64,000 nucleotides of DNA from Lytechinus pictus (Eukaryota). This document shows, one piece after another, positions 12,563 through 34,100 of this stretch. Every line of letters begins with the position of its first letter. The stretch's first letter is position 1. The position numbers and the translations under genes were made by a program. The notes under the pieces were generated by a model. The model had not been told where the DNA came from, did not search any database, and saw nothing but the letters and a program-made list of their open reading frames with translations. The stretch covers positions 25,482,001 to 25,546,000 of the forward strand of contig NC_087260.1 of assembly GCF_037042905.1 (NCBI RefSeq), written 5' to 3'.

Positions 12563-12602
<40 letters not shown>

Positions 12603-12730: not shown

Positions 12731-13382
12731 GTATTGTTTTGTTTTTTTAGGGGCGCAAAGAATAAGCTCATCGTGACAGTGAAAATCATTTTTATGACTT
12801 ATAACGCTTTAAAAACAAAACAAAAGTCGAATGACAACACTTGGGGGGTTGGGGGGAGGTCGCTTTGTTTTGTTTTTGTTTTTAGTGTGTGGGTGTGTCT
12901 GCGTTTATTTGGTGTTGAATAAACATTCGATTTATATGAAACAAAGAACAGAATTTAGAATATTCTATTTACAATGTTATTTACCGATGTTGATCATTGA
13001 AAATCATGAGATAGGCCTATATATTTCCCCGGCTCATTTGATCATATAAATATTTTGACAAAGTACAAGATGAGCATGTTTATATCCCCTTACTAAATTG
13101 TGTAAACCAATCAAAAATTGCCAAATGGAAATCGGTCACTATGATTAATTATGATAAATTATTTGCACTCCACTTTATATCATATTTAAACCTATTAAAG
13201 AAAATAACAAGAGAGGAAACATAACCACCACTTGGAATGTGATCATACCATTTTCCAAAGCTTCATGAAAGATGATCTTAGACATGATAAGCATGTAAGC
13301 TAATAATAATTATGTTTATTATGTTTGAATATCATAGCGACTGCCTGGCTATCCGGATTAATGTTAGAAGAACTTTGGCTGA

Positions 13383-13409
13383 GGAATTCCCCATGCCGAG
13401 GAATTCCCC
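13383..13409 (-). promoter_or_regulatory. Two tandem NF-kB consensus-matching sites (GGGGAATTCC) in a 17-bp duplication
   Basis: ggaattcccc at 13383-13392 and 13400-13409 match GGGRNWYYCC on the minus strand. Confidence 0.35.
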
Positions 13410-16400: not shown

Positions 16401-19198
16401 CCCCTTGAGGGGAGGGGGTGAACATGCATGAAATCGCAATATTGTGTAATTTATCGTGTTTGTACAATACTTCTGAAAAAAGTGGAAAGGCGGGGGCGTT
16501 CTGCGGCCCTTGCAAAGGAATTGATATCAGACTAAATACTAGGAAATGAAACATGATGAAGGAGATGACCAAAGTAAAGACAGATATATTATTTACTGCA
16601 TATGAACGATTTAATTATAATCATTATTCGTTTAATCATTCAATATCTACAAATTTTTTAGTCTATATTTTCATTGAATGGAAGGAATTTTTTTTATACC
16701 CCTTGGATGCAGTATTGTATATCGCTTGCATACCACATTAATCCAGGTTTTTTTTTTGTGTTGATTTATAGTTTGATTTACCTTTATGAAATATGAATTT
16801 CCGGTGTATTTCTTTTCCTGCATATACGTTAGTAGTTGCCCATGCAAGTGCACTTTTAGCGAGAATTATCAAGCTGTCAGTTTATGGCATCCAACTTTAC
16901 CCCTGAACTTGGCTCTCAGAGGGGAAATATAGTCTCATTCTCAGATGTTACCGTCGGTTCGTTTACCGTATAAAAACAAAGTTTCGAATTCTGTCAACAC
17001 GAAACGATTTTCATGGTATAGGTTGTTCAATAAAGTTATGACAATGAGGCCTATCGCGATGGATTGAACCTGAATAGAAACATCCTTAGAAATTGAAATA
17101 ATGTTGATGTATAGGCTATACTGCAGAGATGTATAATGTATTTGATTTAATATTACCATCAGGACCGGTCGCATAAATCGATGGGGGGAGACGACCTAAA
17201 GGGGATGTTATCCCCCGGCCCCTCACTTGATTAGCAGGGTAACACGAGTTACACGACACAACCCCCCCTTTATGTATACTCCCCTTTCTTTTCCATTATT
17301 TATTCTTATTTTTCTCCACGACCCCCTTCCAAAAAAAAAAAATAATAATAATAATAATAATAAATAAAAATAAAATGATGATGATAGTGTACACTGTAAA
17401 CAAAATCGAAATTAGCATTCTTATATTTATGTTTTTGCTCTGGCTTGTGAAGTCAGTATTCTTGTTGATTTCTGACAGTGATCGCTCCTAACTCTCAATT
17501 TCTCTAACAATGTCTTGATATAAAGTAGTTCCAACGGCGGGGGTGTTATAATGGAAGGGGCGTCGCCTGGATGAATTTTAATAGGTAGAAAGATGAAGTA
17601 CTAAAATGTAATTTCATTTTTATTGGCCCGATATGGGTGATTATTTAGATATAACATGGTTTAGAAAAACAAGCTGAGGGGCATGCAAAGTTAAACAAAC
17701 TTAAACACTTTTTCACAAAAAATACAATAATAATGATGCATCTTCCTCTCTCGGAAGAGCACATTTTTATTATAAAATAACATTTCTACCTTTCTACCAT
17801 AAAAAGTGTAGGTGTATAATAGGGTATGAATTTGGTGATAATAATTTTCACCACAATAATCGGCCTCTCTCTAGTCTGCATCCCGGGGTCTTCATAAAGT
17901 TTTCGAAGCCCCCCCCCCTCATAATCCGTCCATTTTTAATGTTTTAGGACTGCGCCTGAATATAGGGTAATCGACTTTATCATATTTATTAACATTTTTT
18001 TTTAGTCGGACCAAAATTCCTCAACCAAAGTATTTTCTCCAATCATGTTCAAGAGTACATGCACTACTCAACAAGTATTGATAAATATACTTTATAGGCC
18101 CTCTATTTATCAATAGGACCTTGTGGTAATGCTTTTTTTGTGTGAACTATCACCAAACGAGAAAATCAAATGCAAATCGACCAGTAATCACAACGTCAAC
18201 AACAAAACTTGACCTGCATGCTATAATGAACCTAATCAGATTCCATTACCATCATGAAATCAAATTTGCGCCTTCGATAGAGACTATTTCTTCGCATATG
18301 TTTTGGTTGACGGTGTTTTCTTGGAATATGACCCCATCTGACCCAGCGATTTAAATGGATGTGGTTAGGCACGAAGCTGCGAGGACAAAGTATGAAGTTG
18401 AACTTGGGCGAACTGAACAGGGTCAGTCGCACGAGGGTATGTCGGATGAGGGGGGGGGGGGATGAGGATGAGGGTCGGAGGAGGATCGGGAACGACCGGG
18501 GGGGGGGGGGGGGGAGGTGGCGAGGGGAGCAAAAATGTAACGGGAAAGACCGATGATTATGAAAGGGTAAGTACTAGCCTTGCTGTTCTCAGAACAACAT
18601 ACTTTCATGATCTGATTACATTAAGACAATGTATCAAGCAAATAGTATAAGGCTATACAATCGCCAGTAATTTGTTTATATTTTGTCATTCTTAGCCCAT
18701 GTTTTTCTGAGAGCACTATTATTCTGTAAATTACTTTGTCCGAAGGGTGAGTGAAAATTAATCTGTCAATAAAGAAATATTGGAAAATTGAACATGATGA
18801 TTTAGGCGCAAAATTAACCATTTTGGCCACATTATTTTACGTCATGTACATTTTTTTTCAAAATTGAGTGTGTCCCCCCTGTTTGAAGAAATAACCCCAA
18901 TAACCCCCTTATTTTGCTCATCAGATGTTGGAGAAATAAACTAAAATCGATAAATAAAAATATTTTGAAATTCTGCATCCATTCTTGATCATGCTGATGA
19001 CGAACTAGATCCAATCCAAGTACAACGATGCACCATTATGCTGAGACTCTGAGTGGGTGAATGTGGTCTAGTAGAAGTTTAGTGCAATTATTTATTGTTC
19101 AGTGTCTTCGTTCATCTACAGATGGCGCTATTTAAGTTATTGCCTCAACGAGAGATTTTCGAAGCCCGTGGATAACGTGAGCATACGGGAAATGATTT

Positions 19199-19360
19199 CT
19201 GGGTCCCGTAACACAAAGGTTAACGATTGATTGTTAATTTCAAAGAACAATTCTGATTAGCTCATAGTCAGTCTATTTAGCAAAATGCGCATGCAACGAG
19301 GATCTTGATTGGTCATTTCATTTAGCAATTAATCGTTAACTTTTGTCTTACGGCGCCCTG
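19199..19360. mobile_element. PIF/Harbinger-type MITE with CTG target
   Basis: ctg ggtcccgtaacacaaaggttaacgatt ... aatcgttaacttttgtcttacggcgcc ctg. Confidence 0.75.
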
Positions 19361-21086
19361 GTGTGTGACCCTTGTTCATCGAGAGATAGCGCTATTTCAT
19401 AAAAAAGTTGCTGCCCGAACAAGAAGCTCAAATTCATCAAAATGTTTATTTTTCTTTCCACTGTCTGGTAGTTTGAGATTTTAGCGAAGAAAATAAACGA
19501 AATAGAAATTCAAATAACCACAAAGAGATGTCATGAAAAAATATTTTGCTTTATTTTCATTAACCTCATATAAATCCAAATTAACAACAAGTAAATCAAC
19601 TTGTTCACCTTAGAACGGGATAAGATAAAATACGATATACCATGAATATCAAAGTACATGTCATCATATTCTTATTCTAAGATAATGATTTCGAAGATTT
19701 ATTAATATTGCATACACAAATTGTTTATATAGATAGTTTATTTCAAATGCTGGTAAGTGCATAGATCTTGCAAATCTATTATAAAGAATGCAAATTATTA
19801 CCTAATTTCAATAACAAAATTATTCGAATCTGTAATTTACAAATACAAATATTATACAAAATAGATGCCTTTGTAAAACAGGCCAATCAAAGTATGTTGT
19901 TGTGGAACACGGTTACAAATTTCTAGAGATTAACAGGTTTACTTTTTAATTTGCAAAGTAATTTTCATCTAATTTCAATAATTTTGCAACATTCATATCA
20001 AAAGATTATAAAAACGATAATCACTGTAGTTAGAAATAATTCAAAAGTAATTCCATCTCTCTCTCTCTCTCTCTCTCTCGCTCCCACTCCCTCATACTTT
20101 ATTTCTTTCCTTTCTCTTTTTTTTCAATCTCCCTTCACCATTAACCAATGTAGTAATGTATCTACATACCAACATATTCATGTTAATGAATGAACTATTC
20201 TATGATTAATATTACTGCCATATATCTCATTTTTATCTAATATACATCCACATCCAAATATTGAAGAAACAGAGTTTCATGCACATACAAGATTGCCTCT
20301 GGGAAAAGACTCGACTGATGCCCTAATGGTTAGCTATTTGTCAACATTTGTGCATCTCACATTTTTGAGATACAAAGACACATTAAAATGCATAATACCA
20401 TTCATTTAAATCCATATGTGCAATTCGTGTGTACTACAACTTAAAATAAATCTTAAATTAATTTAATCACTATTAAACAATCTATAAAGGCCTACCCAAG
20501 GGCAAATATGCATGTTTGAACAGGTTGAATCTTATTCCATCGCATCAACACTCCAGTGAAGACTATAATGTCTTATTTCATCGTCATTAAGATAGAGTGC
20601 TGTTATTCATCCTTGAAAAAAATACTCCTTAATAGCACATTTGCAAAGGATATTCCTACAAAACCAAATTGTATTTTTTTGTTTACATTATTTAAAATAT
20701 GATTTACATAGGAATATAATTTTTAGCACCCTTAAAGAATGATGAATGGAAGCCTGATACTTCACTCAAATGAGTAAATATACTATAGTTCAGCCAACCG
20801 AGGCAATTATAACTGAAATGACATTACACGTAAAGAAAATGAGTTATTTAAACACGATTATTTCACTTGTGATATCAAAGTACATCTAAAAGAATAATCT
20901 ACATCTTCATTGGTAAACAAAACAGTATCAATAATGTGCGATGTAAAAAAAAAGGGTTCTCATTGTATTGTCAGCATGATAATAAAGGCGAAGAACACGA
21001 TGGACACCATACAAATGTCGTTCCCAAAACACGAAAGCTTGTCAGAGGTCTACCAAACATTGCAACAATAAGGTGTATGCCTCTTA

Positions 21087-21260
21087 CAAGGGCCGCGGAA
21101 GCGGGGGGCTGGAGGGGCTTCAGCCCCCCCCCCACTTTTCCCCAAAACTGTGTACAAAAACGTAAATATGACCATATGATTGTGATTTTTTGCATGGCCA
21201 GCCCCCCTCCCCCCACTTTTGGTTCAGCCCCCCACTTTGAAAACCGTTCCGCGGCCCCTG
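21087..21260. mobile_element. GC-rich TIR MITE (hAT-like termini) about 200 bp after the SLC2A stop; degenerate relative at ~16265-16512
   Basis: caagggccgcggaa ... ttccgcggcccctg, with internal cagcccccc..cacttt repeats. Confidence 0.75.
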
Positions 21261-21465
21261 TTTTGGATTTCTGACATGTTAATAATATCATGTTAATAAA
21301 TACCGTGCAGGCGAAAAAAGATGATGATTTTGAAAACTCAGTAAAGTCAGTTCACCTTAAGTTATGCTATTCTGTTAATTCAGCCTTCATAGCAATGAAA
21401 ACCATATGCCTGTATTGCACTTCCGAACATTGTAATATTAGATTTTCCCTTTCTCCTCATAGTCA

Positions 21466-21678
21466 TCATCGATTCATAAGCGGTAAAGGGGAATACCCTT
21501 CCTGGTATTTTGTGAAACTCTGGTCCTCGTCACCATCCGGGTTTTTCATTTCTTCGAATCCTGTCGATACTTCGACGAACCGCCGATCCTTCGTCTCGGG
21601 CAGGTAAAGGAGTATGATGAGGGTGGTGATGGCAAGGGAAGCAGCGAAAATGATGAAAGTGTAGGCGCCAATGGCTAC
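21466..21678 (-). CDS. SLC2A: SLC2A terminal exon, TM12 and tail (VAIGAYTFIIFAASLAITTLIILLYLPETKDRRF...YSPLPLMNR*)
   Basis: tttccag acceptor; PETK motif; TGA at 21466-21468. Confidence 0.95.
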   Translation of the reverse strand, partial: VAIGAYTFIIFAASLAITTLIILLYLPETKDRRFVEVSTGFEEMKNPDGDEDQSFTKYQEGYSPLPLMNR

Positions 21679-24600
21679 CTGGAAATAAACACGAATGGAA
21701 AATTAGTTTGAAAGGATAAAAATGGACAGCCCGTGTATAGACAGGCCGGAACGCCTATATCTCCCCTCTGAAGGTTGGAAAAAACCTTTGTGGAAAGGTA
21801 AGGGGCGATGAAGTTAAACAAATTATTCGTCTCTATCAATCAAAGAAGAAGGGAGAAATTGAGAAAGGGGGAAGAGAGAGAGAGTGGTGCGAGAAAGAGA
21901 GAGAGGGAGGGGCTGAAAGAAAGGGGGAGTGAGAGAGAGAGGGAGCGCCGATGGGGTCACTAAATTGTTTCATCTGACAAGCTGATTATTCTGACAACTA
22001 CGCCATCAGTTGGCAACTTTTCATTTATTTTTATTGTCTGAGAAGACATTGCCTATGACTTTTACTAAAGAAATTCTCAGACAAAGACATCTTGTTCTTG
22101 TCAGACTGAGCTTCGTGAAACGGTGCATTGGGTGTGTCATCGCGAATGAAAATATCTCGGCACTTGTGAAAACTTTTCGGCACACCAACAGGTTCCACAT
22201 TCTCTCTTGAAACAACATACCAAGTGAACACAAGATAGGGAGAGAAGGTCAAAAGTAGATTTTAGGATCATCCAAAAAGAACTGAAATAGTAATCAATAA
22301 TCAAACAAGATTTTACTCACTAAAAGAGCGGGAAAGCAAAATTGGATGACGACGTCGACCCACCAACCTATATGTTGGGTAACGGAGAGGGCGGCCTTCC
22401 TTGGACCAACAGACCACAGTTCAGAACATACCAAGGGTGTAAATATTTCTAGGAAAATCAAGCACAGATCAAAAATGAAATTAAATGAATAGAAAATAAA
22501 TTAGGGGTGATTAAAATATATTCTTAAAGAGTATTGTGATAACATGAAGAATAGACAAATATATAATGTTGGCTGAAAATGTTATCTTACCTGGACCCAG
22601 AGGGAATGCGATGAAAAATACACAATTAGCTACGAGGGCAAACCACGACAGCCATGAAACACGGTACTAGAAATTAAAGAAAAAAGAGAGAAAACAACTT
22701 AAAGAAGGATAAAATCTATAGTATTTACAGAAAATTCCCGTTGCAAATGGGATACGAAAATTCGGAATGGAGTTCCCAATCATCTTAGTCAATGCTGAAT
22801 GTTGATTTACAATTTGTCTGTAAAAATACCTTTCCATCCATAATATTATATTCGACACATCATGAAATGTTTGTGTGGATAAAATCAAAGACTTGCAGAT
22901 CACAATAGGAAAACACGTTCAGCTTACACTTTGGCCGATTGCATCCCAGTTTTTCATAAATTCATTCACAATTACTTCTCTACATCTTCATAATGAAACA
23001 CCTTCCTGATAACGTCTTTATCTATCAAAAGGAGAATAAAAACTGAATGTGCATTTTTGAAAAATACTTTATGTGTTTACTTTATGCAAAATCAATTAAA
23101 TTAGAAACCAGCAAACTAATTTTGTTGTTAAATTTGCAGCTCCCTCGTTTTTCTCTTTCTCCCTCTTCTTTCTCTCTCCCACTCTCTTTGTGCGCAAGTG
23201 TGTGCGATTTATTATTCTGTCTATCGTCTTCTAAAACTTCCTCTTCCCCTCCATAATATTCTTGTCTGATTCTTGATTGTTTAAGAAAACACACACAAAA
23301 AAAAAATCAGAGTAAAAAACAAAAATCGCCAAATATATAATTTGGCGATTTGACATTATTCATTATTGTGATATGCGCTATACAAGAACTGTTTATTATT
23401 ATCATCATTATTATATAAATGTTTCCGAGATATTGCCCATGATGGCCCGATTGAATAGAAAGATACACAGTTCCGACAATCCCAGATGAATGAAATAAAA
23501 AATATTTTTTTACTATATTTCTTTTCTAAGGGTATAGAAATTTGTGGTTACCTCGAAAATCAGGAACAATGTAAAAGCAATGGCACTTATCGTCAGCAGC
23601 CCATACATTGAGAAAAGCAAAGGCTTCCGTTGAAATCTTGATAGATTTGCAAAATACTGTGAGAAGAAAAAACATTTAAAAAACAAGAAATACACTAAAC
23701 CGCGCTCTGTCTAATATACAGCGGGATAATGTATCAAATTGAAAATGACAAATATTGAAATAATAAATTCAATCCCCTCTTAACATCAGGCACAGGTCTG
23801 CTTTTGCTAAATATTTTTTTTTCTTATTAAATTTCCCTACTTCTTATAATCAACTTGATTATTTGGGTTGACTTGTTTTTTTTTTAAGTATTATAGGCCT
23901 ACCTCAACAACAGTAGCCGTAGAGTAACAAGCAGCCCAAGCCAGAGATCCTAATCCAGTTTGTACGTCTGTCAATCCAGCAAACAAAAATATTTCATTCG
24001 AGTAGAAAATAATCTGAAATTAAAGGGTTATGTGGAGAAAAAGATTATAAATCACAGCTACGACACTACATCACGTGTTATGACAAAATGTGTAATGAGC
24101 TATTATGCTTTCAAGGAAGTTAAACAGATTTCGCCTCCTTATACTCAGACATGAATGAAATATATATTTTTATATCTATATCAAAGTCTGCATTGGCTTT
24201 ATTGATGGATGCACTTAATGGTGGGGGAGGGGAGGTGGTGAGGTCATGGACCCCGATAAAAGAAAGTAAAGGGAAGGGAAAATATTGAAATATAACTTTA
24301 TTCTTCTGAATATCATGCCAAAATCTATCAGATCATTGCATTTTTATATTAAAAAGATATATTTTTTTGCTAACTTGATTGGCTCGCTAGTAGCTTTTTA
24401 GAAATTTGCCCCATGTGCCATGTCTGGTCCCTCAAATTTTAGCCTCATTACGCCTGTTGTTTTCCAACTATCTCCGGTCACACTTACCGCGTTAATACCG
24501 GAAAGTTGTCGGGCTAACCGCAGTAAGATGCACATAAGTAACGGCATTTTCCAGTTAGCATCCCTGAGGAAGATAACCTCCCATGCGCTTGCCCGGACGA

Positions 24601-27600
24601 TTCTTGAATTGAAACGGTGGTCATCACGAAGAACCTGGATCTCCTGTTCAACCTCATCTTCACCCCGAAGTTGACGAAGAGCTAAAAGAAAACGATCATT
24701 ACTGAGATATTCTCATTATTATTTTTGAGGGGAGGGCGTGGCACAGCCATGATTACACATCTCTTACACGTCTTACTAAACAGGTAAAAAGCTATTAACA
24801 AAAACGTTTGTCACTCAAAGAGTGAAGAGTGAAAAACAAAGAGTGAGTCTCGATATCTGAAGAATTTTCTGTCAAACGAAGAAGATTCTGTCAATCAAAA
24901 GAGATGAATAAATCGACACAATTACAGAAGATTGATAGATTGACATCATAACAAAAATAATAGCTTCTTTCAAAACAGGTAAGCAACAATGCACTCGCCT
25001 GAATGAATAAAGGATCTCATGTTATAAAACAGAAAGAAAAGGACACTTCCTCCAAAGGATGTCGTTATCTTCAAATCTATTTCTTTAAAATTCTCTTGCA
25101 ATAATGAATTTTCAGTAAATGTCGCTTTTGATGTATGAAATGGTTTTATCAATTGTATGAAGAAAAGTCTTGAATGGAAAAATTCTGGCTAGAAAAAAAA
25201 AATCAAAATATACCTCCAGCCGCTTTTTCCTCTGCAAACTTAACATGAAGCAACCAATCAGGACTCTCTGGACAAAACAGAAGAAGAACTATCTGGAAGA
25301 GATCGATGAGGGCGGGCAACCCAAGAGCGCCAGGCCAAATATTTCTGCCTTTGAACACGAAGAAACCCATTATCTGAAGAGAGAGAGAGAGAGAGGGGGG
25401 GGGGGGGGGATAAGGGATGGAGGACAGAGTGGAGAAACCCCAATATTTGTTTTCAGTAAAGCAGGTTGTTTCATATGGAATTTTAAGTTTAATTGTAATT
25501 TAGACCAATATTAATTCAAACGAAATCATTCTCTCTGGTGTCGATGTAACTTTGTAAAAATATTTCTAAAAAAATTAATGGACGAAAACACAATTATGTG
25601 ATATGACAGTGAAAATATGAAAAATGAACAGAGTAATATACTTGCATTTCTCCATTTCACCCTTTCATAAACTCTATTAAAACTATAATCTCCTTATTCA
25701 TCATACCTGGCCGAGGACAATGCCGACAGTGAATAATACTTGGTGGAGCCCACAGATAGAATCTCGTCTTCTCTTAGGACTGATCTCACTGAGATACACA
25801 GGGACTATGGTCAACGAAATACCTGAAGTTATCGGTCAAGAATTAAGGAGAAGTAGAAGGGAAAGAAGAGGAAGAAGAAGAAGAAGAAGAGAAGGTAAGT
25901 CAAAAGAAAAAGTAGAAGAAAACGATTGGAGAAAAGGAGATTAGACAAATCTTTGGAATTTACAATTTGAATAGAAGATTTTTAAGTTATTCTTATTTTG
26001 TTAATCTTTTTTCTTTCCTTCTTTCTCCATATGACTCTCATTATCACGTTTCTTGTATTTTTTTCTATGATTATGTTAAGTAAGGAATATAAATAATCAT
26101 AAGAAAGTTCACGTTGAAACATCTTGGAATCATTAATGTTAGTAGTCCATCAGTATATAAATTTCTTCCAGGTTTACATAGCGTATGATTAAACCATGAT
26201 ATTTTGAATGTCTTTAGGTTATGTATTACGTAGGTATTAGTCAAATAAATTCAAAGTAATAAAAAAAGAAAAAAAGTAAACAATCGTCTTTTTTCCTTTT
26301 GGGGAAAACATGAGCAACTTCAGCACTACCAACTTTGAAGTTCACAAAACTATGAAGTAGCCATACACCAATGGCTCAAGAGATAGTTCAGATAGTCATA
26401 GTATTTATTTCTTTAACAAACTTTGCTATTCTACATTTTATCGTTATTAACCATTGCCTTTTCCATGTTGGGAATTAAAAAAAACGAAAGAAATTAATAA
26501 ATATCTTTTTTGCAGAAATTTCAATCGAACTTTGAATCCGAGGAATGGCAAACAATAATAACTAGTCTGCTTTAAACGATAGTAACCCAAAAGCATCGGA
26601 GACCCTTGGAACAAAGTTATTGGAAGAATATGAACACAAGAATATTTCATATTCGGGAATTTAGCTAATTGAAAATGTTGAAAGTGTTTGGTGATAATCT
26701 TTGATTGGATTTATGTTGTTGATTGACTTCTTTTCCGGGGGGGGGGGGGGGGGGGCTGACAAATCTTAGATCCGACCCTACATAGATATTCTTTGCTCAC
26801 CAACATCGAGACCTTTCATTGCTCGACAGAAAATGAGAAGCTCGGGTGACCCAGCGGCTTCGCTGCTCCCCATTAAGATACATGTTACAATGGAAAATGC
26901 ACTGTTGCCAATCAATGTACGGCTCCTGCGAAAACAAACATTCAAAATAATATATATACATACTCGACATAATTGGAGTTGATTCAATATCGTAACGTCA
27001 AATAACCCACTTATTATTGGTTTTTATCAAATAGTTTGTAACTATGAATTTATTTGTTTTGTTTTCTTCTCTTCTTGTTCTTCTTTTTGTTTTCTTCTTC
27101 TTCTTCTTCTTCTCCTTCTTCTTCCTCTTCTTCTTCTTCATTTTCTTTGTTTTTCTCACCCTCCTGCTCTTCCTTCTTATATTCTTTTTCTTATTCTTTT
27201 TCCCCCTTTCTTCTTATATGAAAGAGATTCATATTGTTAAAAAAACACGCACACATTCTCCTCGACAAAAAGGGTTGCCCTTGGAGGTAGAACATTATGT
27301 CGATCGTGGCAATATTTGCCTTAACGAAAATGTGACAAGAAAGGGGCAATCAACTGCAAATTAACTCCCACATTCGCCTATTTTATGAACCCTTACTTAT
27401 TTGTACAATCTGTGCAGAAACGAATTTGTGATCAGAAATAATTAATTATTGTAAAACAAGAATAAACAGACGGGGACTAACCTTCCAAATTTGTGAGACA
27501 ATTTTGCCCCTGCCACGGCACCCACAATACGACCGATACAGAAGACTGTAATAGTGCTAGCCCATAACCAGGCCTGTCCGTATTCATCTAATGGTGAACC

Positions 27601-30600
27601 ATAGCGATAGATGTGAGTCTCATTGTAAAATTCTTTGACAAACTGGTCGAAGAAAACCAAAACAAAATATCGTCACGAAAAGTTTGCCAAAAAAGTTAGA
27701 AATCAAATAAATGAAAGAGTTTTTATCACCACAACAGAAAAGCATTTCATCATTTTTTTTCACATGATCTCAGTGTTTAAAAGTGCACCCTTTATTTACC
27801 ATTAATTTCATCAAAAACATGAAAAGATATATATTGCATCAAGACTGTTATTATTAAAATTATTAAAAGTAGGCCTACACTACTTAGTTTTACTGGAGGT
27901 TTATGGACATAAATAACAAAAACTTTCAATAACAGAAGCTTTTCCATTAAACTATCTTTGTCATAGTTCAAGACACAAAGGAAACAACCTTTTGATAAAA
28001 ACCTTCAGGATTTAGGTTTACAACCAAAAGTTTTAATTTGCCAGATTTTTGCATTTGTCACATATTTTTTTTTTTGTCACCAAGTCTATCTAAGATTAAC
28101 AAAACTTCAAAAATTCGGAGACAGATATCATAATGGCAACAATTTTTATCACAATATTTGAACGTGCACATTGACCCGGTTTAGTTTCATTTTGCCTCAT
28201 TTGTCCCAATTACAAAGAGTTGTGATGTATACAATCAATCTCAATAAGGCCTATGGACACCATCATCTAACTGCCAAAATTGATTATGCAAAGGTAAAAT
28301 GTTCTCAATAAAAATGATGATGGACATAACATTGCTGCTGACTATGCATCTCTGTTTTGACAGATTCCAATTCATTCAAGATAAAAGAATTATGGCGGCT
28401 CTGGCTTTCTATATAGTTAAGATTCTGTTCTGTTTATGGTAACTCCCGCAGGAACTCAGCAGGACAGCATTTTGCTGGTAAACGCCAAGCTGGTATGTAA
28501 CCAATTACCTAGGAAACATTTTACGTCTAGGTTAATCAGTCATAGTGGCTGACGTAATAGACGACAGATATCACTCGTGGGCCTTTTTATCAAAGTGGAG
28601 ACAATGGCAGAGTTGGGATTCGAACTCACAACCTTGCGATTATGAGTCCAATGCTCTAACCACTGGACCACACGGTCGGATCAATTGTATCTTCTCGTGA
28701 GACCTCATCCTCACCTGTGATGGTCCAGTAATAACACCATACTGATAGCCACTGGTCAATGAAGACCCAATGAGGAGCGTACAGACGGTCAGCCAAAACC
28801 ACAAAGAAAGGTCCTGTAAAAATAAGTTATTTCTAATTAAATCATGTTTATTGACACATTCAATTTTATGCTCACTTGGCCTCCCCCTCTCCCCTCCTCT
28901 ATCCCCCTCTTTATCCCCTCTCTTACTTCAGCACACTAATGTGATAACATGATAATTGATTAAAAGTACACAGCAAAAACTGTGGTGTTAACTGGTGTAT
29001 ATAGAGGACGACACCAGTTATTTTACACCGGTGTTAAATTGGTGGTGTTAGTTTTACACCTATAGGTGTTATTACAACACTTTTGGTTGTTAAATTTACA
29101 CTCTTTGGTGTTATGTTCAATCTCTAGGGTGTAATTTTAACACCTCAACTGATGTCAGCTTTAACACCACAGTTTTTACAGTGTACATTTCATCTGATTT
29201 TTATTATTAAGTTTGGTACAATGCCTAAATAAAAGGCATAATTTTTTTGTTGTACTTTATCAAAAGTGACTCTATTAAATAACATACCGGCGGACGTCAT
29301 TTTTGTTGTGTCAGCGTTAAGGTTGAACTTCTTTTAACCTATTCTCTGAAGAAAAATCAGCAAATGTAAATTTCTTAAAAACATCACTTTGCTTGTTTTT
29401 AAAAAATATGCAATTTTAGAAGCGAAAACAATTTTTTGTTTACTTTCCACTATTATATTTGAAATACAAAACAGGCTCCTCTAACCTTGATATGAAAAAG
29501 ATAAAGGCAAGTAAAAAAAAATATCGAAAAAGAAAAGAAATGGGCCAATCGTTTTCAAAATAATTGTCTAGTCTTTGATGCCATGCACGTATTATTTTTG
29601 CCACCGTGACGGTGAAACGCACTTTACACTGTTAAAGTGCAGTACCCATGGAACTCAAATCAAACAAATATGATAATAACAGTCTTTATTACGGAACACT
29701 GCTCAGACAGGGAGACTCTATCATTGACATGCTCTAAGCTAAGGCAGGATTAATATAATGATAATGATTACTAAGGACGGTTGCAGGAGTTTCGTTATCA
29801 AATGTAAATAGAACCAAAAGAGTCTAAGCATACAGTGTAAATATGATATTTTGTGATAAGTGTTGTAGTTAAACTTCCGCCCGAATGAAGTGTACGTCGC
29901 CAGGACCATTGGAGTCATACAAGTAATCATGATCCTCACAAAGAATAAATGTATACCTTGAATGAAAACTACCAACTTACATTATTAGCATATTTCTTTA
30001 AAGATATTCTGTATCCGTGTCTATATTATTTGTGTTTCATTCGATCAATTAACTAATCAATCGTCAATCCATCCATCCATCATTCGATGAATCAAACAAT
30101 CANNNNNNNNNNNNNNNNNNNNNNNNNNNNNNNNNNNNNNNNNNNNNNNNNNNNNNNNNNNNNNNNNNNNNNNNNNNNNNNNNNNNNNNNNNNNNNNNNN
30201 NNNNNNNNNNNNNNNNNNNNNNNNNNNNNNNNNNNNNNNNNNNNNNNNNNNNNNNNNNNNNNNNNNNNNNNNNNNNNNNNNNNNNNNNNNNNNNNNNNNN
30301 NNNNNNNNNNNNNNNNNNNNNNNNNNNNNNTTAAACAAGTGCACACCAAGTTACCAATAATGCCTATAGCATTTTCATTTATTTGAAAGCAGGATAAAAG
30401 AGCATTGCACATTAAATGCCTTGCTCACAGGCATAGGTGCCGTGGCCGGGGATCGAACCCCGGACTTTTTATGTATAGCTAGGCGCCTTAGACCACTCGG
30501 CCACGGCACCTGAGCCAATCAATCGATCAATCGATCGATNNNNNNNNNNNNNNNNNNNNNNNNNNNNNNNNNNNNNNNNNNNNNNNNNNNNNNNNNNNNN

Positions 30601-30860
30601 NNNNNNNNNNNNNNNNNNNNNNNNNNNNNNNNNNNNNNNNNNNNNNNNNNNNNNNNNNNNNNNNNNNNNNNNNNNNNNNNNNNNNNNNNNNNNNNNNNNN
30701 NNNNNNNNNNNNNNNNNNNNNNNNNNNNNNNNNNNNNNNNNNNNNNNNNNNNNNNNNNNNNNNNNNNNNNNNNNNNNNNNNNNNNNNNNNNNNNNNNNNN
30801 NNNNNNNNNNNNNNNNNNNNNNNNNNNNNNNNNNNNNNNNNNNNNNNCCAACCGACCAAG

Positions 30861-30903
<43 letters not shown>

Positions 30904-31150
30904 CCACCAATCAATCAATCAATAAACCAACCAATCAATAAACCAACCGACCAATCAATCAATCAATCAATCAACCAACCAACCAATAAACCAACAAATC
31001 AACCAATCAACCAATCGAATCAATCAATCAATCAATAAACGAACCGACCAATCAATCAATCAATCAATCAATCATTACATCACTTTTAGTCTATTTAGAA
31101 CAGTCGTACTAAAAATCATCTACCTTTGAACTTACCGACTGAGGCACCAT
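21466..31150 (-). CDS. SLC2A: SLC2A/GLUT facilitated sugar-porter family MFS transporter, complete, 12 exons, 500 aa, divergent substrate site
   Basis: join(31136..31150,28715..28813,27482..27642,26801..26925,25707..25822,25214..25373,24488..24681,23903..24013,23552..23656,22591..22666,22321..22448,21466..21678) = 1503 nt, open frame. Motifs: KFGR, YLSEISP, PESP, QLSGINA, SELWSVGPR, LPETK; N-glycosylation site NET in loop 1. Confidence 0.93.
22321..22448 (-). CDS. SLC2A: SLC2A exon 11, TM11 (EIFTPLVCSELWSVGPRKAALSVTQHIGWWVDVVIQFCFPALL)
   Basis: ttcctag / gtgagt; EL...GPR motif; 128 nt. Confidence 0.94.
22591..22666 (-). CDS. SLC2A: SLC2A exon 10, TM10 (YRVSWLSWFALVANCVFFIAFPLGP)
   Basis: tttctag / gtaaga; 76 nt. 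Confidence 0.92.
23552..23656 (-). CDS. SLC2A: SLC2A exon 9, TM9 (YFANLSRFQRKPLLFSMYGLLTISAIAFTLFLIFE)
   Basis: ctcacag / gtaacc; phase 0 to phase 0. Confidence 0.9.
23903..24013 (-). CDS. SLC2A: SLC2A exon 8 (IIFYSNEIFLFAGLTDVQTGLGSLAWAACYSTATVVE)
   Basis: atttcag / gtaggc; FYS..IF..AG pattern. Confidence 0.92.
24488..24681 (-). CDS. SLC2A: SLC2A exon 7, ICH and TM7 (ALRQLRGEDEVEQEIQVLRDDHRFNSRIVRASAWEVIFLRDANWKMPLLMCILLRLARQLSGINA)
   Basis: cttttag / gtaagt; QLSGINA motif. Confidence 0.95.
25214..25373 (-). CDS. SLC2A: SLC2A exon 6, TM6 (IMGFFVFKGRNIWPGALGLPALIDLFQIVLLLFCPESPDWLLHVKFAEEKAAG)
   Basis: tcttcag / gtatat; PESP motif. Confidence 0.94.
25707..25822 (-). CDS. SLC2A: SLC2A exon 5 (GISLTIVPVYLSEISPKRRRDSICGLHQVLFTVGIVLGQ)
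   Basis: acttcag / gtatga; sugar-transport signature. Confidence 0.95.
26801..26925 (-). CDS. SLC2A: SLC2A exon 4, TM3-4 (SRTLIGNSAFSIVTCILMGSSEAAGSPELLIFCRAMKGLDV)
   Basis: ttcgcag / gtgagc; 125 nt. Confidence 0.93.
27060..27212. repeat. (CTT)n-rich polypyrimidine tract
   Basis: ttcttcttc; source of the poly-Phe ORF. Confidence 0.9.
27482..27642 (-). CDS. SLC2A: SLC2A exon 3, loop 1 and TM2 (FVKEFYNETHIYRYGSPLDEYGQAWLWASTITVFCIGRIVGAVAGAKLSHKFGR)
   Basis: gaccag / gttagt; 161 nt. Confidence 0.95.
28390..28677 (-). mobile_element. tRNA-derived SINE in SLC2A intron 2
   Basis: Head 28605-28677 has A box TGGTCCAGTGG, B box GAGTTCGAATCC and a CAT anticodon-like loop, but the acceptor stem does not pair and non-tRNA body follows. 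The body end is approximate. Confidence 0.7.
28715..28813 (-). CDS. SLC2A: SLC2A exon 2, TM1 (DLSLWFWLTVCTLLIGSSLTSGYQYGVITGPSQ)
   Basis: tttacag / gtgagg; GYxxGVI motif. Confidence 0.92.
28968..29185. mobile_element. CACTA/EnSpm-like non-autonomous element with acacc/ggtgt subrepeats
   Basis: tacacagcaaaaactgtggtgttaa ... ttaacaccacagtttttacagtgta; degenerate relative at 58324-58553. Confidence 0.8.
30331..30511 (-). mobile_element. tRNA-derived SINE (head plus start of body) in SLC2A intron 1
   Basis: A box TGGCCGAGTGG, B box GGTTCGATCC, followed by the SINE-typical cctgtgagcaaggcattt; truncated by an N-run. Confidence 0.75.
30848..31073. repeat. (AATC/AACC)n tetranucleotide microsatellite flanking N-runs
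   Basis: caatcaatcaatc arrays. Confidence 0.95.
31136..31150 (-). CDS. SLC2A: SLC2A coding exon 1 (MVPQS)
   Basis: aacATGG start context, gtaagt donor in phase 0; a very short first coding exon is typical of GLUT genes. Confidence 0.7.
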
Positions 31151-34100
31151 GTTAGGTAAGATATCGCTTTTATCTTAAAACAGGAAACCTTGAAGCATAC
31201 AAACTTGAATCCAGACACACTTCAAATGATGTTATCAGTGTTTGTGGTGTCAGTAACAAATATCACTTCTTAAGAACTTCGGGAAACACTTCCGTCTCTA
31301 TATCAGTGATTGATCAATTATCAACGATTCCTATACTTTATGAAACGATTGATATATGCCTCAGTATACTTTTCACCCATCAGTAGCGGGTGGTGCAGAA
31401 AGTCTGACATCCAAACCCCAAAATAGTGAATCCATGGAGAAAGGGGAACTGGTTCTCATCTGAATCTTTGTAGGACGCCAATAAAATAGTTGTTCTGTTG
31501 ATTAAAGTGATCCACTATGTTGCTCTGTATGGTCTACATTTCGGTGACTGCTTCTCAGGACACACACTAGCATATGCCACATGATGTCTCTAACAGAGTT
31601 CCTCGAAAGTATGAAAGTAACTTTTTCAAATGGCACCAGTTAGTACAAAACTATTCTTATATCACCACAGGAGATAGAACGAATAGCTTTTTACAACAAA
31701 TCTCATTCATTGTCCGTTGGATATCAAGTTTCTCAAAGCGCAGCATGCAATGCAGTGTATAATAATTCATAACCCACGCCGTGTGAATAACTGTATTTGT
31801 TTTCTACCGTAAATAGCTTTTGTTATCAATGGGTGCGTAGAGATCAAATCAATGTCTGAATGCACTCCCAGTTTACGGTCAGATTTCAATGATAAAAGAA
31901 TAAGAGCTAGAGATGAAACGAAAGCGAAATATATAATGCATTATTTATATTATACGGTATGATTTCACAAACAGAATAGAGGAAATGGTATTATAACGAA
32001 TTACGATATAAGTTTGTTTATAGTGATTATATTTCTAGCTTAATAGTAATAATCTTCACAGTATGAGCTCATAATATTAAATAAATAAGTCATTATTCTA
32101 CGATGTGTCTCTCTGAAATTCGTTGTTTGAACAAAATCACACGTTATGAGACCACGAATACAGCCTTTCAAAGTTAAGAAAAGGGTGGTGATTGGTATTT
32201 TATTTGAGATTTAATATCATAAAGATAAGAATTACTTTTCCAAAAAGAAAAATAAACCCAGCTTGACAACCTATGAGAGGACAACCTATGAAAGAGAATA
32301 ACAACAAAGATGATCAAAGAGAAAATTATCACCAAAGAAAAGAGAGAGGCGGGTGTCTATAGTACGTGGTGGGATGGAGCAGATTTGGGAATCATGTATC
32401 TCTTTCACAAACACTGTTTTCGATATAATTATAAAAAAAGAGTTGAGAGCAAAATATCAATTATTGGTCAAAGGAGACACGTATGTTTGTGTGATAAAAT
32501 ATTGGGTATAAAGCATTCGATGTGTAAATATCCACACCAAATGCGTAAGATTTACATAGCATTTGGTGTCTTTTACCCAACAAACATGCATGGTCCCTCT
32601 TAAGCTAATATTGGGTTAACTTTTTATTCCAGAATGTATAGGTCTTAATCTTAAAGACCCGTCACAATGCTTAGTATGTTAATGGGGTAGTTAATAGGGT
32701 AGGATGGGAAAACTTTGGTAACGTTTGGTGTCACAGGAGCCTCACTCACACAAATAGAACAGAGAAAATAAACCATAGTGTCATTTGTTACCAACTAGAC
32801 ACGCCTTAATACTTAAAGTTCCGACCGACTTCAAGCCATCCACTTTACATGTACATGCATTTAAAGGCTGGCACCCCTCTACAATAACCTAATAGATGTA
32901 ACCGTCGAGGTAACCTAATTCGTTAAGCTAAAATCCGGCGGGCAATGAGGAGATCGATTTCGTTTAAAATGATTTCATACAGCTGCACACAATAATTATT
33001 AATCAACAATATTTATGCTTACTACGTATGTCACTAACGTGATATTAGAAAGCTGTCAGAGTTAAAATTGATTTTTAGTTAATGACGCAATGCTTCATAA
33101 CATGACGATTTGGATTTATAGGTTGTACGTTTTCTTTCTATAGAGAGGAAGGACGGGGGGGGGGGGGGTGAGAGGAACGGAGGTAGATGAACACATGAAA
33201 CTTCTCTCACTTTCATTCTCTTTCCCTCTTGGTTTAAATTTCTATTTTAATTTTGTTGTTCCTCATTCTTATCTTTGATTTTCATCATTTTGCATGTTCA
33301 TATTTTAATTGCTTCCCTTTATATTCCTTGTATTTAATAGTAAATTTCTCTTGACAATTTTCTTGTATTACTNNNNNNNNNNNNNNNNNNNNNNNNNNNN
33401 NNNNNNNNNNNNNNNNNNNNNNNNNNNNNNNNNNNNNNNNNNNNNNNNNNNNNNNNNNNNNNNNNNNNNNNNNNNNNNNNNNNNNNNNNNNNNNNNNNNN
33501 NNNNNNNNNNNNNNNNNNNNNNNNNNNNNNNNNNNNNNNNNNNNNNNNNNNNNNNNNNNNNNNNNNNNNNNNNNNNNNNNNNNNNNNNNNNNNNNNNNNN
33601 NNNNNNACACACGGGAATAAAAAAATAATTCACCTAGAAACTTACAGGTTTGTTTGTCATTTAATCTACAGTAAAATCGTATCATACCAATTGTATATAA
33701 TTCAATGCGCCAGCATTTACCATCCGGCCATACATATGCAAATGACTGAAAACTATACAATGCATAATAATATTAATAATAAACAAGACTTTCGTCACAC
33801 TCTCAAATGTTTAATTTTTCCTCTTAATCTCAAATGACCATGCTGCATTTTGTCTATATACATCTTCCATCACATCATTTATTAAAAGAATTCATTATGA
33901 AAGAGTATAAGAACAAACTGTACAAGATGTATGTGAAGTGGCAAGGCATTATACTACATTCTCAAAGTGTTACTGACATATCGTTGATTCGAGAAACAGT
34001 TTTAAAAACAATTACAAAAACGCCCCTCCCAATTTTGATTAAACAATTATGGAAATAATACGAGAAAAACATAACGAGGGTTAACTGAATCTGTACAAGC

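What the first reader, a model, noticed from the sequence alone, without database searches (positions are those of the whole stretch)
21466..31150. Intact GLUT-family transporter with a remodelled, cationic substrate pocket
Seen: the 500-aa frame and all splice sites are intact. By eye alignment to human GLUT1 (recalled sequence): TM7 QLSQQLSGIN becomes RLARQLSGIN (Q279R, Q282R); TM8 N317 becomes Y; TM10 FFEVGPGPIPW becomes AFPLGPEIFTP (E380 and W388 lost); TM11 NWTSN becomes GWWVD; TM2 GGMIG becomes GRIVG; TM4 GRFIIG becomes CRAMKG; PESPR becomes PESPD; the second motif A ERAGRR becomes SRFQRK. Q161, Q283, N288, E146, E393, R400 and PETK are kept. Established: these residues bind hexoses, and the family already includes a repurposed anion carrier (GLUT9, urate). 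Inference: a non-hexose, possibly anionic substrate (sugar acid, phosphate or sulfate, or an organic anion), or a sensor-like role.
Basis: partly seen in the sequence, partly recalled or inferred. Interest (0 to 1): 0.7.

Follow-up and report, generated by a model that had tools for sequence, protein, structure and literature searches.

The report
Divergent sea urchin GLUT-family transporter gene
This is an intact, selectively maintained, sea-urchin-specific member of the glucose-transporter (GLUT) family whose sugar-binding pocket and one gating motif have been rewritten, so it probably no longer works as an ordinary glucose carrier; what it does instead is unknown.

Summary
A 12-exon, 500-codon gene lies on the minus strand (21466-31150), and every intron is GT-AG. 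Both assembly gaps lie in intron 1, inside a (GATT)n microsatellite. They flank a copy of a young dispersed repeat and do not touch the reading frame.

All listed substitutions relative to GLUT1 were reproduced. One is uncertain: Asn317 faces Tyr or Ser depending on the aligner, but it is lost either way.

The gene is not decaying. Lytechinus variegatus and Strongylocentrotus purpuratus carry orthologues with identical exon lengths and no stops. dN/dS is 0.14-0.19, with an upper 95% bound of 0.25. Diadema has an orthologue too.

These four form a 100/100 clade on a long stem, sister to ordinary echinoid GLUT paralogues, and evolve about 2-3 times faster than them.

"Cationic pocket" is only partly right. 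The cavity helices carry 6 basic and 4 acidic residues, against 1 and 1 in GLUT1. The changes shared by the whole clade are T30Y, I164F, N415D, loss of Q282, N317 and E329, and loss of the TM10 prolines.

E380 is already Ala in most ambulacrarian GLUTs, so its loss is not special to this gene.

Expression could not be tested, and the substrate is unknown.

The parts
31136..31150 (-). Coding exon 1 (MVPQS), followed by donor gtaagt
   Evidence: Orthologous MAPQS|gtaag in S. purpuratus L017:2490-2504. It is the N-terminus of L. variegatus P0133.
28814..31135 (-). Intron 1. It holds both assembly gaps (30103-30330, 30540-30847), (GATT)n microsatellite flanks, and a dispersed-repeat copy at 30331-30539.
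   Evidence: Flanks are collinear with the uninterrupted L. variegatus intron 1. The repeat island has 87 matches to other sites in the genome, from 2467 first-look candidates; the near-full-length copies are 91-98% identical.
28715..28813 (-). Exon 2: TM1 (S26, Q29, Y30 in GLUT1 numbering)
27482..27642 (-). Exon 3: loop-1 N-glycosylation sequon (NET), TM2 with R76, N-domain A motif (KFGR)
26801..26925 (-). Exon 4: TM3 and TM4 (R126 kept; K129 and D132 new)
25707..25822 (-). Exon 5: end of TM4, E146, R153, TM5 (Q161 kept, F164 new)
25214..25373 (-). Exon 6: TM6 and the N-domain SP motif, PESPD (R212 lost)
24488..24681 (-). Exon 7: cytosolic helical domain and TM7, RLARQLSGINA (Q279R, Q282R; Q283 and N288 kept)
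23903..24013 (-). Exon 8: TM7 end and TM8 (N317 lost; it faces Tyr or Ser depending on the aligner)
23552..23656 (-). Exon 9: degenerate C-domain A motif, SRFQRK (E329S, G332Q), and TM9
   Evidence: The motif definition comes from PMC7898563.
22591..22666 (-). Exon 10: first half of TM10 (F379 kept, E380P)
22321..22448 (-). Exon 11: rest of TM10 (G384E, P385I, P387T, W388P), E393, R400, TM11 (N411G, W412 kept, N415D)
21466..21678 (-). Exon 12: TM12, C-domain SP motif PETK, conserved C-terminal tail, stop TGA at 21466-21468

Best explanation
Shown: this is a real, intact protein-coding gene. It is an echinoid-specific paralogue of the SLC2A/GLUT sugar-porter family that arose before the Diadema-camarodont split. 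It has evolved about 2-3 times faster than its sister paralogues, yet has stayed under purifying selection.

Inferred: it still folds as a 12-helix MFS carrier with the cytosolic helical domain, and it is N-glycosylated in loop 1. However, its central cavity and its C-domain A motif have been rebuilt.
- Three of the six GLUT1 glucose H-bonding residues are gone (Q282, N317, E380).
- The TM10 Gly-Pro-Gly-Pro-x-Pro hinge is lost.
- New residues are fixed across the clade: Y30, F164, D415.
- The cavity-lining helices have become charge-rich, with both basic and acidic residues.

The most likely working model is an alternating-access carrier whose specificity has moved away from D-glucose to another small polar or charged solute, with altered gating kinetics because E329 is lost. 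The net positive charge seen in this window is a recent, lineage-specific overlay, not the defining feature of the clade. The substrate is unknown.
For: Intact frame:
- 12 exons, 500 codons, all introns GT-AG.
- L. variegatus and S. purpuratus orthologues have exactly the same 12 exon lengths, no stops and canonical splice sites.

Selection:
- Pairwise dN/dS is 0.14-0.19 by three methods.
- Bootstrap 95% upper bounds are 0.19-0.25.
- Window against L. variegatus: 46 synonymous and 24 nonsynonymous codon differences.

Family:
- Pfam Sugar_tr scores 220 bits for P0133 (95% identical to the window protein) and 284 bits for Diadema P0131. TIGR00879 scores 249.6 against a cut-off of 237.8.
- The best PDB matches are GLUT1, 5, 9, 7, 4 and 3.
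- The AF2 model of P0131 has pLDDT 87.5 and pTM 0.86, with target-normalised TM-score 0.96-0.97 and rmsd 1.5 A to GLUT1.

Phylogeny:
- The orthogroup has 100/100 support on a stem of 1.19 substitutions per site. It is sister, at 100/99, to echinoid clade b/c.
- Amino-acid identity to S. purpuratus is 78% for the window gene, against 88-92% for L. pictus paralogues. Diadema to S. purpuratus is 57% against 78-83% for paralogues.

Remodelling:
- Of 83 columns that are at least 90% conserved in 27 other GLUTs, 19 are changed in at least 3 of the 4 orthologues. The control clades gave 1, 5 and 7, though under a stricter rule (changed in every member).
- Residue table.
- Charged residues in cavity helices: +6/-4 here, +1/-1 in GLUT1.

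Literature:
- Q161, Q282, Q283, N288, N317 and E380 make the glucose H-bond network. E329Q favours the inward-facing state (PMC7462842).
- A and SP motifs are defined in PMC7898563.
- GLUT9 changed specificity at the positions equivalent to 282, 317 and 380 (PMC11169512).
Against: - The runs that hold the stretch look like low-coverage DNA.
- NCBI models in relatives are truncated by intron read-through. They are 92 aa and 127 aa in S. purpuratus, and 393 aa in L. variegatus. The D. antillarum model (286 aa) skips the exon 9 equivalent. This could mean weak or incompletely spliced transcripts.
- Several pocket positions vary even within the clade: 282 is R/R/R/M, 317, 380 is P/P/A/A, 384 is E/E/A/A, and 411 is G/G/N/N. 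TM8 and TM10 differ between the window and L. variegatus. That fits relaxed constraint on the pocket as well as it fits a new, tuned binding site.
- The TM domains (dN/dS 0.13-0.21) are less constrained than the cytosolic loop (0.07) and the tail (0-0.11).
- Single mutations of glucose-binding residues do not always abolish GLUT1 transport (PMC7462842).
- No structure of the window protein itself could be computed, so whether the new charged side chains face the cavity was not tested.
Confidence: 0.5

Rival explanations
1. It is still a hexose facilitator (glucose, fructose or another neutral sugar) with altered affinity or kinetics. On this view it is simply a fast-evolving tissue-specific isoform.
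For: - Q161, Q283, N288, W412, R126 and the QLSGINA core of TM7 are kept.
- Sister ambulacrarian GLUTs also lack E380.
- Single binding-site mutations are often tolerated in GLUT1 (PMC7462842).
- GLUT9 keeps low glucose transport despite changes at 282, 317 and 380.
Against: - Three of six H-bonding residues are lost together.
- The TM10 prolines and W388 are lost as well.
- An Arg replaces Q282 and an Asp replaces N415 in the sugar site.
- Of 83 family-wide conserved columns, 19 are changed.
Confidence: 0.25
2. It is a non-transporting or very slow GLUT-fold protein, such as a sensor, a transceptor or a scaffold. On this view it is maintained for cytosolic interactions rather than for flux.
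For: - The C-domain A motif has lost E329 and G332 in all four species. R212 of PESPR is D, F or V in the three camarodonts.
- Mutating these conserved charges locks GLUTs in the inward-facing state (PMC7462842).
- The cytosolic loop (dN/dS 0.07) and the C-terminal tail (0-0.11) are more constrained than the TM domains (0.13-0.21).
- Pocket residues vary between close species (one search list).
Against: - E146, R92, E393, R400, R333 and PETK, which make most of the gating salt-bridge set, are kept in the window.
- There is no long signalling tail like the one I recall in the yeast Snf3/Rgt2 sensors.
- The tail result rests on only 38 codons.
- The inward-facing AF2 model is what AF2 may give for GLUTs in general, so it is not evidence.
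Confidence: 0.15
3. One reading: a cationic pocket adapted to an anionic substrate, such as a sugar acid, a sugar phosphate or sulfate, or an organic anion.
For: - The window and L. variegatus have R76, K129, R279 and R282, giving a net +2 to +3 in the cavity helices.
- The family does include an anion carrier, GLUT9 (PMC7462842).
Against: - Diadema has Q76, I129, Q279 and M282, and S. purpuratus has Q279.
- Acidic residues are gained in the same helices: D415 in all four species, D132 and E324 in the three camarodonts, and E384 in the window and L. variegatus.
- K129/D132 sit i and i+3 apart on one helix, and R76/D415 and R282/E384 may also sit near each other, so the charges may neutralise one another. 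This is an inference and was not modelled.
- GLUT9 binds urate without basic residues.
Confidence: 0.1
4. It is an incipient or unexpressed pseudogene that merely looks intact.
For: - Annotated models in relatives are fragmentary.
- No RNA evidence was obtained here.
- Its rate is elevated relative to paralogues.
Against: - The open frame is 500 codons with identical exon lengths and canonical splice sites in three species, at dS up to 0.7-0.9.
- dN/dS is 0.14-0.19, with upper bounds of at most 0.25.
- A Diadema orthologue is also intact.
Confidence: 0.03

Closest known systems
Human GLUT1/SLC2A1 and the other class I/II GLUTs (PDB 4PYP, 5EQG, 6THA, 4ZW9, 4YB9, 9J2N)
   Same: - Same Pfam family and the same 12-TM plus cytosolic-helix fold.
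- A loop-1 N-glycosylation sequon.
- R126, E146, Q161, Q283, N288, R333, E393, R400, W412, PESP and PETK are kept.
- About 33% identity.
   Different: - Q282R, N317 lost, E380P, G384E, P385I, P387T, W388P, N411G, N415D, T30Y, G76R, I129K, R212D.
- The C-domain A motif ERAGRR becomes SRFQRK.
- There are ten charged residues in the cavity helices, against two in GLUT1.
Echinoid sister paralogues: S. purpuratus 'GLUT1' P0017, Diadema antillarum P0019 and P0021
   Same: - Nearest relatives at 40-42% identity, forming the sister clade with 100/99 support.
- They share the ambulacrarian traits: A380, the GRxR form of the N-domain A motif, and W413.
   Different: - The sister clade keeps G76, Q161, Q282, N317, E329, P385/P387 and N415, and evolves about 2-3 times more slowly.
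- Diadema to Strongylocentrotus identity is 78% there, against 57% in this orthogroup.
GLUT9/SLC2A9, the urate uniporter
   Same: - A GLUT whose substrate changed through substitutions at the positions equivalent to GLUT1 Q282 (Tyr), N317 (Glu) and E380 (Cys), while N288 is kept (PMC11169512).
- The same three positions are changed here.
- It is the top structural match of the Diadema orthologue model.
   Different: - It is not an orthologue. GLUT9 itself was not in the tree, but the sea urchin clade is nested among echinoid paralogues, apart from the vertebrate GLUTs sampled.
- The residues differ: R, not Y, at 282, and I, not W, at 291.
- GLUT9 has no added Arg/Lys or Asp/Glu pairs, and I expect it keeps an intact A motif (from memory, not checked here).
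Schistosoma mansoni class I GLUTs SGTP2 and SGTP3
   Same: They are a precedent for fast-evolving, intron-rich class I GLUT paralogues that are retained but inferred not to transport glucose (PMC4653847).
   Different: - A different phylum and an independent event.
- The loss of function there was inferred from modelling and earlier assays.
- No residue-level comparison was made here.
Yeast glucose sensors Snf3 and Rgt2
   Same: They are sugar-porter-fold proteins that signal rather than transport (PMC6071613, abstract seen). This is the model for the sensor-like rival.
   Different: - From memory, the yeast sensors keep a sugar-binding site and carry long C-terminal signalling tails.
- This protein has a short 38-residue tail and a rebuilt site.
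- No homology beyond the family level.

Membership tests
Sugar porter family (Pfam PF00083 Sugar_tr; TIGR00879) / SLC2A | Profile-HMM match above the curated cut-off | tested here: met
   - P0133 (L. variegatus orthologue, 95% identical over exons 1-10): 220 bits against a cut-off of 22.3.
- P0131 (Diadema): 284 bits; TIGR00879 249.6 against 237.8.
- Window exons 11 and 12 alone score 18.1 and 21.9 bits.
- The spliced window protein itself has no reference and was not scanned.
Sugar porter family / SLC2A | 12-TM MFS fold with a cytosolic helical domain between TM6 and TM7 | tested here: met
   - Tested by proxy on Diadema P0131. The AF2 model has pLDDT 87.5 and pTM 0.86.
- Foldseek target-normalised TM-score is 0.95-0.97 to GLUT1, GLUT4, GLUT5 and GLUT9.
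- The window protein aligns to it without large indels.
Sugar porter family / SLC2A | SP motifs PESPR (after TM6) and PETKG (after TM12) | tested here: inconclusive
   - PESP and E209 are kept, but R212 is D in the window, F in L. variegatus, V in S. purpuratus and R in Diadema.
- PETK is kept and followed by D.
- The motif definition is from PMC7898563.
Sugar porter family / SLC2A | Two A motifs (GLUT1 G84-R93 and L325-R334) with the acidic residue and Gly-Arg-Arg | tested here: not met
   - The N-domain motif is present in the sister-clade form (KFGRSR).
- The C-domain motif has lost E329 (S/S/S/T) and G332 (Q/Q/Q/P). R333 and R/K334 are kept.
- This lowers "typical GLUT", not family membership.
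Glucose-transporting class I GLUT (GLUT1-4 type) | Glucose H-bond set Q161, Q282, Q283, N288, N317, E380 (PMC7462842) | tested here: not met
   - 3 of 6 are kept in the window (Q161, Q283, N288).
- 282 is R, 317 is Y or S, and 380 is P.
- S. purpuratus also has H161, and Diadema has N161.
Glucose-transporting class I GLUT (GLUT1-4 type) | Orthology with vertebrate GLUT1-4 | tested here: not met
   The true class I-like echinoid gene is clade d (P0040, P0059, P0065), which groups with vertebrate GLUT1-3. This gene lies in a different, echinoid-only clade.
GLUT9-type urate carrier | Urate-contact residues Y327, N333 and W336 (GLUT1 positions 282, 288, 291), and vertebrate class II ancestry | tested here: not met
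   - The window has R282, N288 and I291.
- GLUT9 was not in the tree, but the clade is sister to echinoid paralogues and separate from the vertebrate GLUTs that were sampled.
- The GLUT9 residues are from PMC11169512.
Proton-coupled sugar symporters (XylE / STP type) | An acidic residue in TM1 at the position of GLUT1 N29. The XylE Asp27 / GLUT1 Asn29 pairing is stated in the PMC5491310 abstract. | tested here: not met
   Position 29 is Q in the window and L. variegatus, H in S. purpuratus and N in Diadema.
Processed or decaying pseudogene | Frame disruptions, lost splice sites, dN/dS near 1 | tested here: not met
   There are no stops or frameshifts in three species, introns are retained with GT-AG, and dN/dS is 0.14-0.19.

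The most novel reading that the evidence does not exclude
The sugar-binding cavity of a GLUT fold has been converted, stepwise within echinoids, into a network of buried ion pairs. The candidate pairs are R76-D415 across the TM2/TM11 interface, K129-D132 on TM4, and R282-E384 across TM7/TM10. At the same time the C-domain A-motif glutamate was lost. The result would be either an ion-coupled or charged-substrate carrier unlike any characterised SLC2A member, or a conformationally biased receptor-like protein.
Probability: 0.15. Interest if true: 0.7.

Novelty: new variant of a known kind. Interest (0 to 1): 0.45.

Why it matters
SLC2A members with non-glucose roles (GLUT9 urate, HMIT inositol, GLUT10 dehydroascorbate) show that a few cavity substitutions can retarget this fold.

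Here a whole clade has changed 19 of 83 family-wide conserved positions, including half of the glucose H-bond set and a gating glutamate. It has still been kept under purifying selection since before Diadema split from the camarodonts.

Lytechinus and Strongylocentrotus are experimental models in which expression, knock-out and oocyte assays are routine. The gene is therefore a tractable natural experiment on how far a GLUT cavity can drift, and on what the A-motif glutamate is needed for.

It also gives a practical warning. Orthologues are annotated as "glucose transporter member 1/3/5-like" and are truncated in three of the four reference annotations examined. Automated metabolic inferences from them would be wrong.

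Tried and rejected
Later calls used 23200-32000, 28300-30600, 30331-30539 and 12000-21400.

2. Sequencing runs. Runs X1-X14 hold 0.05-0.25 of the words. I rejected them as RNA evidence.

3. Homology search with a mixed profile. A profile built from a paralogue plus the window's exons (A1) was dominated by the paralogue and did not return orthologues. The orthologues came instead from the exon 7 search of all representatives and from P0002 and P0132 as queries.

4. Own protein. The window's own protein never appeared in the databases. The spliced product has no reference, so it could not be given to structure prediction, Pfam or the atlas. I used P0133 (95% identical, truncated) and Diadema P0131 as proxies. 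Cavity electrostatics were therefore not computed.

5. Recent duplication. Rejected. The best other match in this genome is 46% identical over exon 7.

6. AF2 conformer. The inward-facing conformer of the Diadema model (rmsd 1.5 A to inward GLUT1, against 4.4 A to outward GLUT3) is not taken as evidence of a conformational bias.

7. Intronic RNA genes. None found by Rfam over 23200-32000 or by ARAGORN over 28300-30600.

8. Literature. No paper was found on this orthogroup, its accession numbers or echinoid GLUT paralogues.

9. Species. The window is not identical to L. pictus. A paralogue matches at 87-97% per exon. It differs from L. variegatus at dS 0.14. I leave it as a close relative of Lytechinus.

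Full report
**What is there.** Translating the minus strand of 21300-31300 shows eleven open segments with clear GLUT similarity. Reading the codons at each boundary gives unambiguous AG|exon|GT junctions. Joined, exons 2-12 make 1488 nt in frame, ending in TGA at 21466-21468.

Upstream, at 31150-31136, the minus strand reads ATG GTG CCT CAG TCG followed by gtaagt. Fifteen coding bases could be a chance match, so I tested this exon in relatives.
- In S. purpuratus the orthologous place reads ATG GCA CCT CAG TCG|gtaag. It is where NCBI's gene call starts.
- The NCBI L. variegatus protein P0133 starts MVPQSDVSLWF.

**The assembly gaps (tested first, as asked).** The N runs 30103-30330 and 30540-30847 both lie between exon 1 and exon 2, in intron 1. 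Exon 1 ends and exon 2 begins in phase 0, so the frame does not depend on the gap lengths.

Both sides are flanked by a (GATT)n microsatellite. The flanks are collinear with the L. variegatus intron 1, which has no N. Window 31300->30862 aligns to L018 9852-10277, and window 30098->29183 aligns to L018 10294-11155. Everything between them corresponds to about 17 bp of microsatellite there.

The 209-bp island between the two gaps (30331-30539) is a copy of a young dispersed repeat. It has 87 matches to other sites in the genome, from 2467 first-look candidates; the near-full-length copies are 91-98% identical. This explains why the assembly broke there. Intron 1 is 2322 bp here (536 of them N), 1622 bp in L. 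variegatus and 2629 bp in S. purpuratus. No coding exon is annotated in it in L. variegatus.

**The substitutions.** phmmer of exon 7 against PDB aligns RLARQLSGINA with GLUT1 279-289 QLSQQLSGINA without gaps.

- G76R
- G125C and I129K
- R212D
- E329S, A331F, G332Q and R334K
- E380P, G384E and W388P
- N411G, T413W, S414V and N415D

Q161, Q283, N288, E146, E393, R400 and PETK are kept.

The one uncertainty is N317. The clade has one extra residue between TM8 and the A motif. MAFFT puts Tyr opposite N317. phmmer, run on the L. variegatus protein, puts Cys there, which corresponds to Ser in the window. Asn is absent either way.

**Relatives.** This genome holds no recent duplicate. The best other match to exon 7 is 46% identical.

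Searching all cluster representatives with exon 7 found an 81%-identical S. purpuratus fragment (P0001) and a 56%-identical Diadema antillarum protein (P0002). Using these as queries found Diadema setosum P0131 (489 aa, full length) and L. variegatus P0133 (393 aa).

I projected the window's exons onto the genomic loci of L. variegatus (L018) and S. purpuratus (L017). Both have all 12 exons with exactly the same lengths, canonical splice sites and no stop codon. The same FERM-RhoGEF neighbour gene lies beside the L. variegatus locus, so the loci are syntenic.

The annotated proteins in relatives are truncated only because the models read through introns:
- 92 aa and 127 aa in S. purpuratus
- 393 aa in L. 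variegatus

The 286-aa D. antillarum model instead skips the equivalent of exon 9.

**Selection.** Pairwise dN/dS is 0.14-0.19 for all three species pairs by NG86, YN00 and ML, at dS 0.14 (window to L. variegatus) and about 0.7-0.9 (either to S. purpuratus). Codon bootstraps give 95% upper bounds of 0.19-0.25. Together with the perfectly preserved exon lengths, this rules out a pseudogene.

By region, the cytosolic loop (0.07) and the C-terminal tail (0-0.11) are more constrained than the N-domain (0.13-0.21) and the C-domain (0.18-0.20). This is the reverse of what I would expect for a finely tuned binding pocket. The tail has only 38 codons.

**Phylogeny and rate.** In an IQ-TREE tree (LG+C20) the four orthologues form a 100/100 clade on a stem of 1.19 substitutions per site. 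The clade is sister, at 100/99, to an echinoid-only clade of ordinary-looking GLUTs (S. purpuratus P0017, Diadema P0019 and P0021). The true class I-like echinoid genes (clade d) group with vertebrate GLUT1-3 elsewhere in the tree.

| Comparison | This gene | Paralogues |
|---|---|---|
| This genus pair: window (this gene) or L. pictus (paralogues) vs S. purpuratus, aa identity | 78% | 88-92% |
| Diadema vs S. purpuratus, aa identity | 57% | 78-83% |

The clade therefore arose by duplication before the Diadema-camarodont split and has evolved roughly 2-3 times faster ever since.

**What is special and what is not.** Among 83 alignment columns that are at least 90% conserved in 27 other class I/II-like GLUTs, 47 are kept in all four orthologues and 19 are changed in at least three of them. 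The three control clades show 1, 5 and 7 such changes, counted under a stricter rule that required change in every member.

Changes shared by the whole clade:
- T30Y, I164F, L162V, N415D and F416V
- P387T and loss of P385
- loss of Q282 (R/R/R/M)
- loss of N317
- loss of E329 (S/S/S/T) and of G332

Changes restricted to the camarodonts: G76R (Q in Diadema), I129K and Y132D.

Changes restricted to the window and L. variegatus: Q279R, E380P, G384E and N411G.

E380 is Ala in clades a and b/c and in all hemichordate and other echinoderm sequences sampled except one (Ser), and Gly in clade d. W388 is Phe, Tyr or Trp in all but one of them. So the "loss of E380" is ancestral to the clade, not a feature of this gene.

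**The "cationic pocket".** I counted charged residues in the eight cavity-forming helices. The TM limits are from memory of the GLUT1 UniProt entry.

| Protein | Basic | Acidic |
|---|---|---|
| GLUT1 | 1 | 1 |
| Echinoid paralogues | 1 | 0-1 |
| Window | 6 | 4 |
| L. variegatus | 7 | 4 |
| S. purpuratus | 5 | 3 |
| Diadema | 4 | 1 |

The window's charged residues are R76, K85, R126, K129, R279 and R282, and D132, E324, E384 and D415.

The cavity is therefore charge-rich rather than simply cationic. The excess of positive charge grew stepwise and is largest in this lineage. The only charged cavity change common to the whole clade is acidic (D415).

K129 and D132 lie three residues apart on one helix. 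Positions 76 and 415 lie at similar depths, which is an inference from residue positions within TM2 and TM11. In MFS folds TM2 and TM11 pack together, by general MFS architecture. Positions 282 and 384 both line the ligand site in GLUT1, by my recollection. The charges could therefore pair off, but I could not model this.

**Gating motifs.** PMC7898563 defines the A motifs (G84-R93 and L325-R334) and the SP motifs (PESPR and PETKG). PMC7462842 states two relevant things:
- Mutating the conserved Glu and Arg residues locks GLUT4 in the inward-facing state.
- E329Q helped crystallise inward-facing GLUT1.

This clade has lost E329 and G332 in all four species. R212 is lost in the three camarodonts (D, F, V). 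E146, R92, R333, R/K334, E393, R400 and PETK are kept. I infer altered conformational kinetics, not necessarily loss of transport.

**Fold and family.**
- Pfam Sugar_tr and TIGR00879 are matched well above cut-off by the orthologues.
- The best PDB sequence matches are GLUT1, 5, 9, 7, 4 and 3.
- An AF2 model of Diadema P0131 (pLDDT 87.5, pTM 0.86) superposes on GLUT1, 4, 5 and 9 at target-normalised TM-score 0.95-0.97.
- The model is inward-facing, which I do not treat as evidence.
- The NxT sequon of loop 1 is kept in all four species.

**Expression was not tested.** I worked beside those places afterwards and sent none of their letters to any search tool.

The runs that hold part of the stretch have shares that equal run size over genome size. 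I read them as low-coverage DNA. The intron-retaining NCBI models in two relatives hint at transcript evidence of low abundance, but that is an inference.

**Mechanism.** The best-supported reading (about 0.5) is a functional MFS carrier whose specificity has left D-glucose. Only 3 of the 6 H-bonding residues remain. The TM10 hinge is rebuilt. Arg and Asp sit where Q282 and N415 contact sugar.

The same three positions (282, 317, 380) distinguish the urate carrier GLUT9 from GLUT1. GLUT9 binds its anion with Tyr, Asn and Trp, not with basic residues (PMC11169512).

The rivals are:
- a still-sugar-carrying isoform (0.25)
- a sensor-like or very slow protein (0.15), supported by the A-motif loss and by the stronger constraint on cytosolic parts
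- a pseudogene (0.03)

**Comparison and novelty.** A precedent exists for fast-evolving, retained class I GLUT paralogues that do not carry glucose, in Schistosoma SGTP2 and SGTP3 (PMC4653847). GLUT9, HMIT and GLUT10 are precedents for retargeted GLUTs.

I found no paper on this echinoid clade. It is annotated only as "glucose transporter member 1/3/5-like". I class it as a new variant of a known kind. It is of moderate interest: a well-supported evolutionary observation with an open function.

Noticed in passing
G000:C16:23835791-23848691 (loci L020 and L021), about 1.65 Mb from this gene on the same contig: A second strongly divergent GLUT-like gene. TM7 reads NCCVHLTGVNAV (Q282V, Q283H) and TM10 reads FYHIIEGAAPF in place of the GPGP hinge, while PESPR and PETRN are kept. 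Exons for TM8-9 were not detected at E<=1. Sea urchins may carry more than one remodelled GLUT.
   Followed up: partly
window 30331-30539: The island between the two assembly gaps is a copy of a young, very abundant dispersed repeat of about 180 bp. It has 87 matches to other sites in the genome, from 2467 first-look candidates; the near-full-length copies are 91-98% identical. Other copies have short inverted partner matches about 100-300 bp away, suggesting a palindromic MITE-like element inserted in a (GATT)n microsatellite.
   Followed up: partly
L017 (S. purpuratus), L018 (L. variegatus), P0002 (D. antillarum): Reference annotations of the orthologues are fragmentary. S. purpuratus has separate 92-aa and 127-aa models that stop by reading into introns 3 and 7. 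The L. variegatus 393-aa model reads into intron 10. The D. antillarum model skips exon 9. The genomic loci nevertheless encode the full 500 codons.
   Followed up: yes
P0049 (Holothuria leucospilota 'GLUT1', 558 aa): Another long-branch GLUT (terminal branch 1.91) that has lost Q161 (P), Q279 (C) and Q282 (L) but lacks the Y30/F164/D415 signature. This looks like an independent remodelling in a sea cucumber.
   Followed up: no
alignment (echinoderm and hemichordate GLUTs): Nearly all ambulacrarian GLUTs outside the class I-like clade d have Ala at GLUT1 E380 and His at Q279. Clade d has Ile at N317 and Gly at E380. The "invariant" glucose-binding set of vertebrate GLUT1-4 is therefore not invariant across deuterostomes.
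   Followed up: partly
window 28543-28680, minus strand (intron 2): There is an open frame reading VVQWLEHWTHNRKVVSSNPNSA, a motif that looks like a dispersed-repeat (SINE-like) remnant. ARAGORN finds no tRNA there.
   Followed up: partly
window 23148-23185 (intron 9): This stretch tripped the reads tool's filter, which the tool says also trips by chance. It was avoided in all later searches.
   Followed up: no
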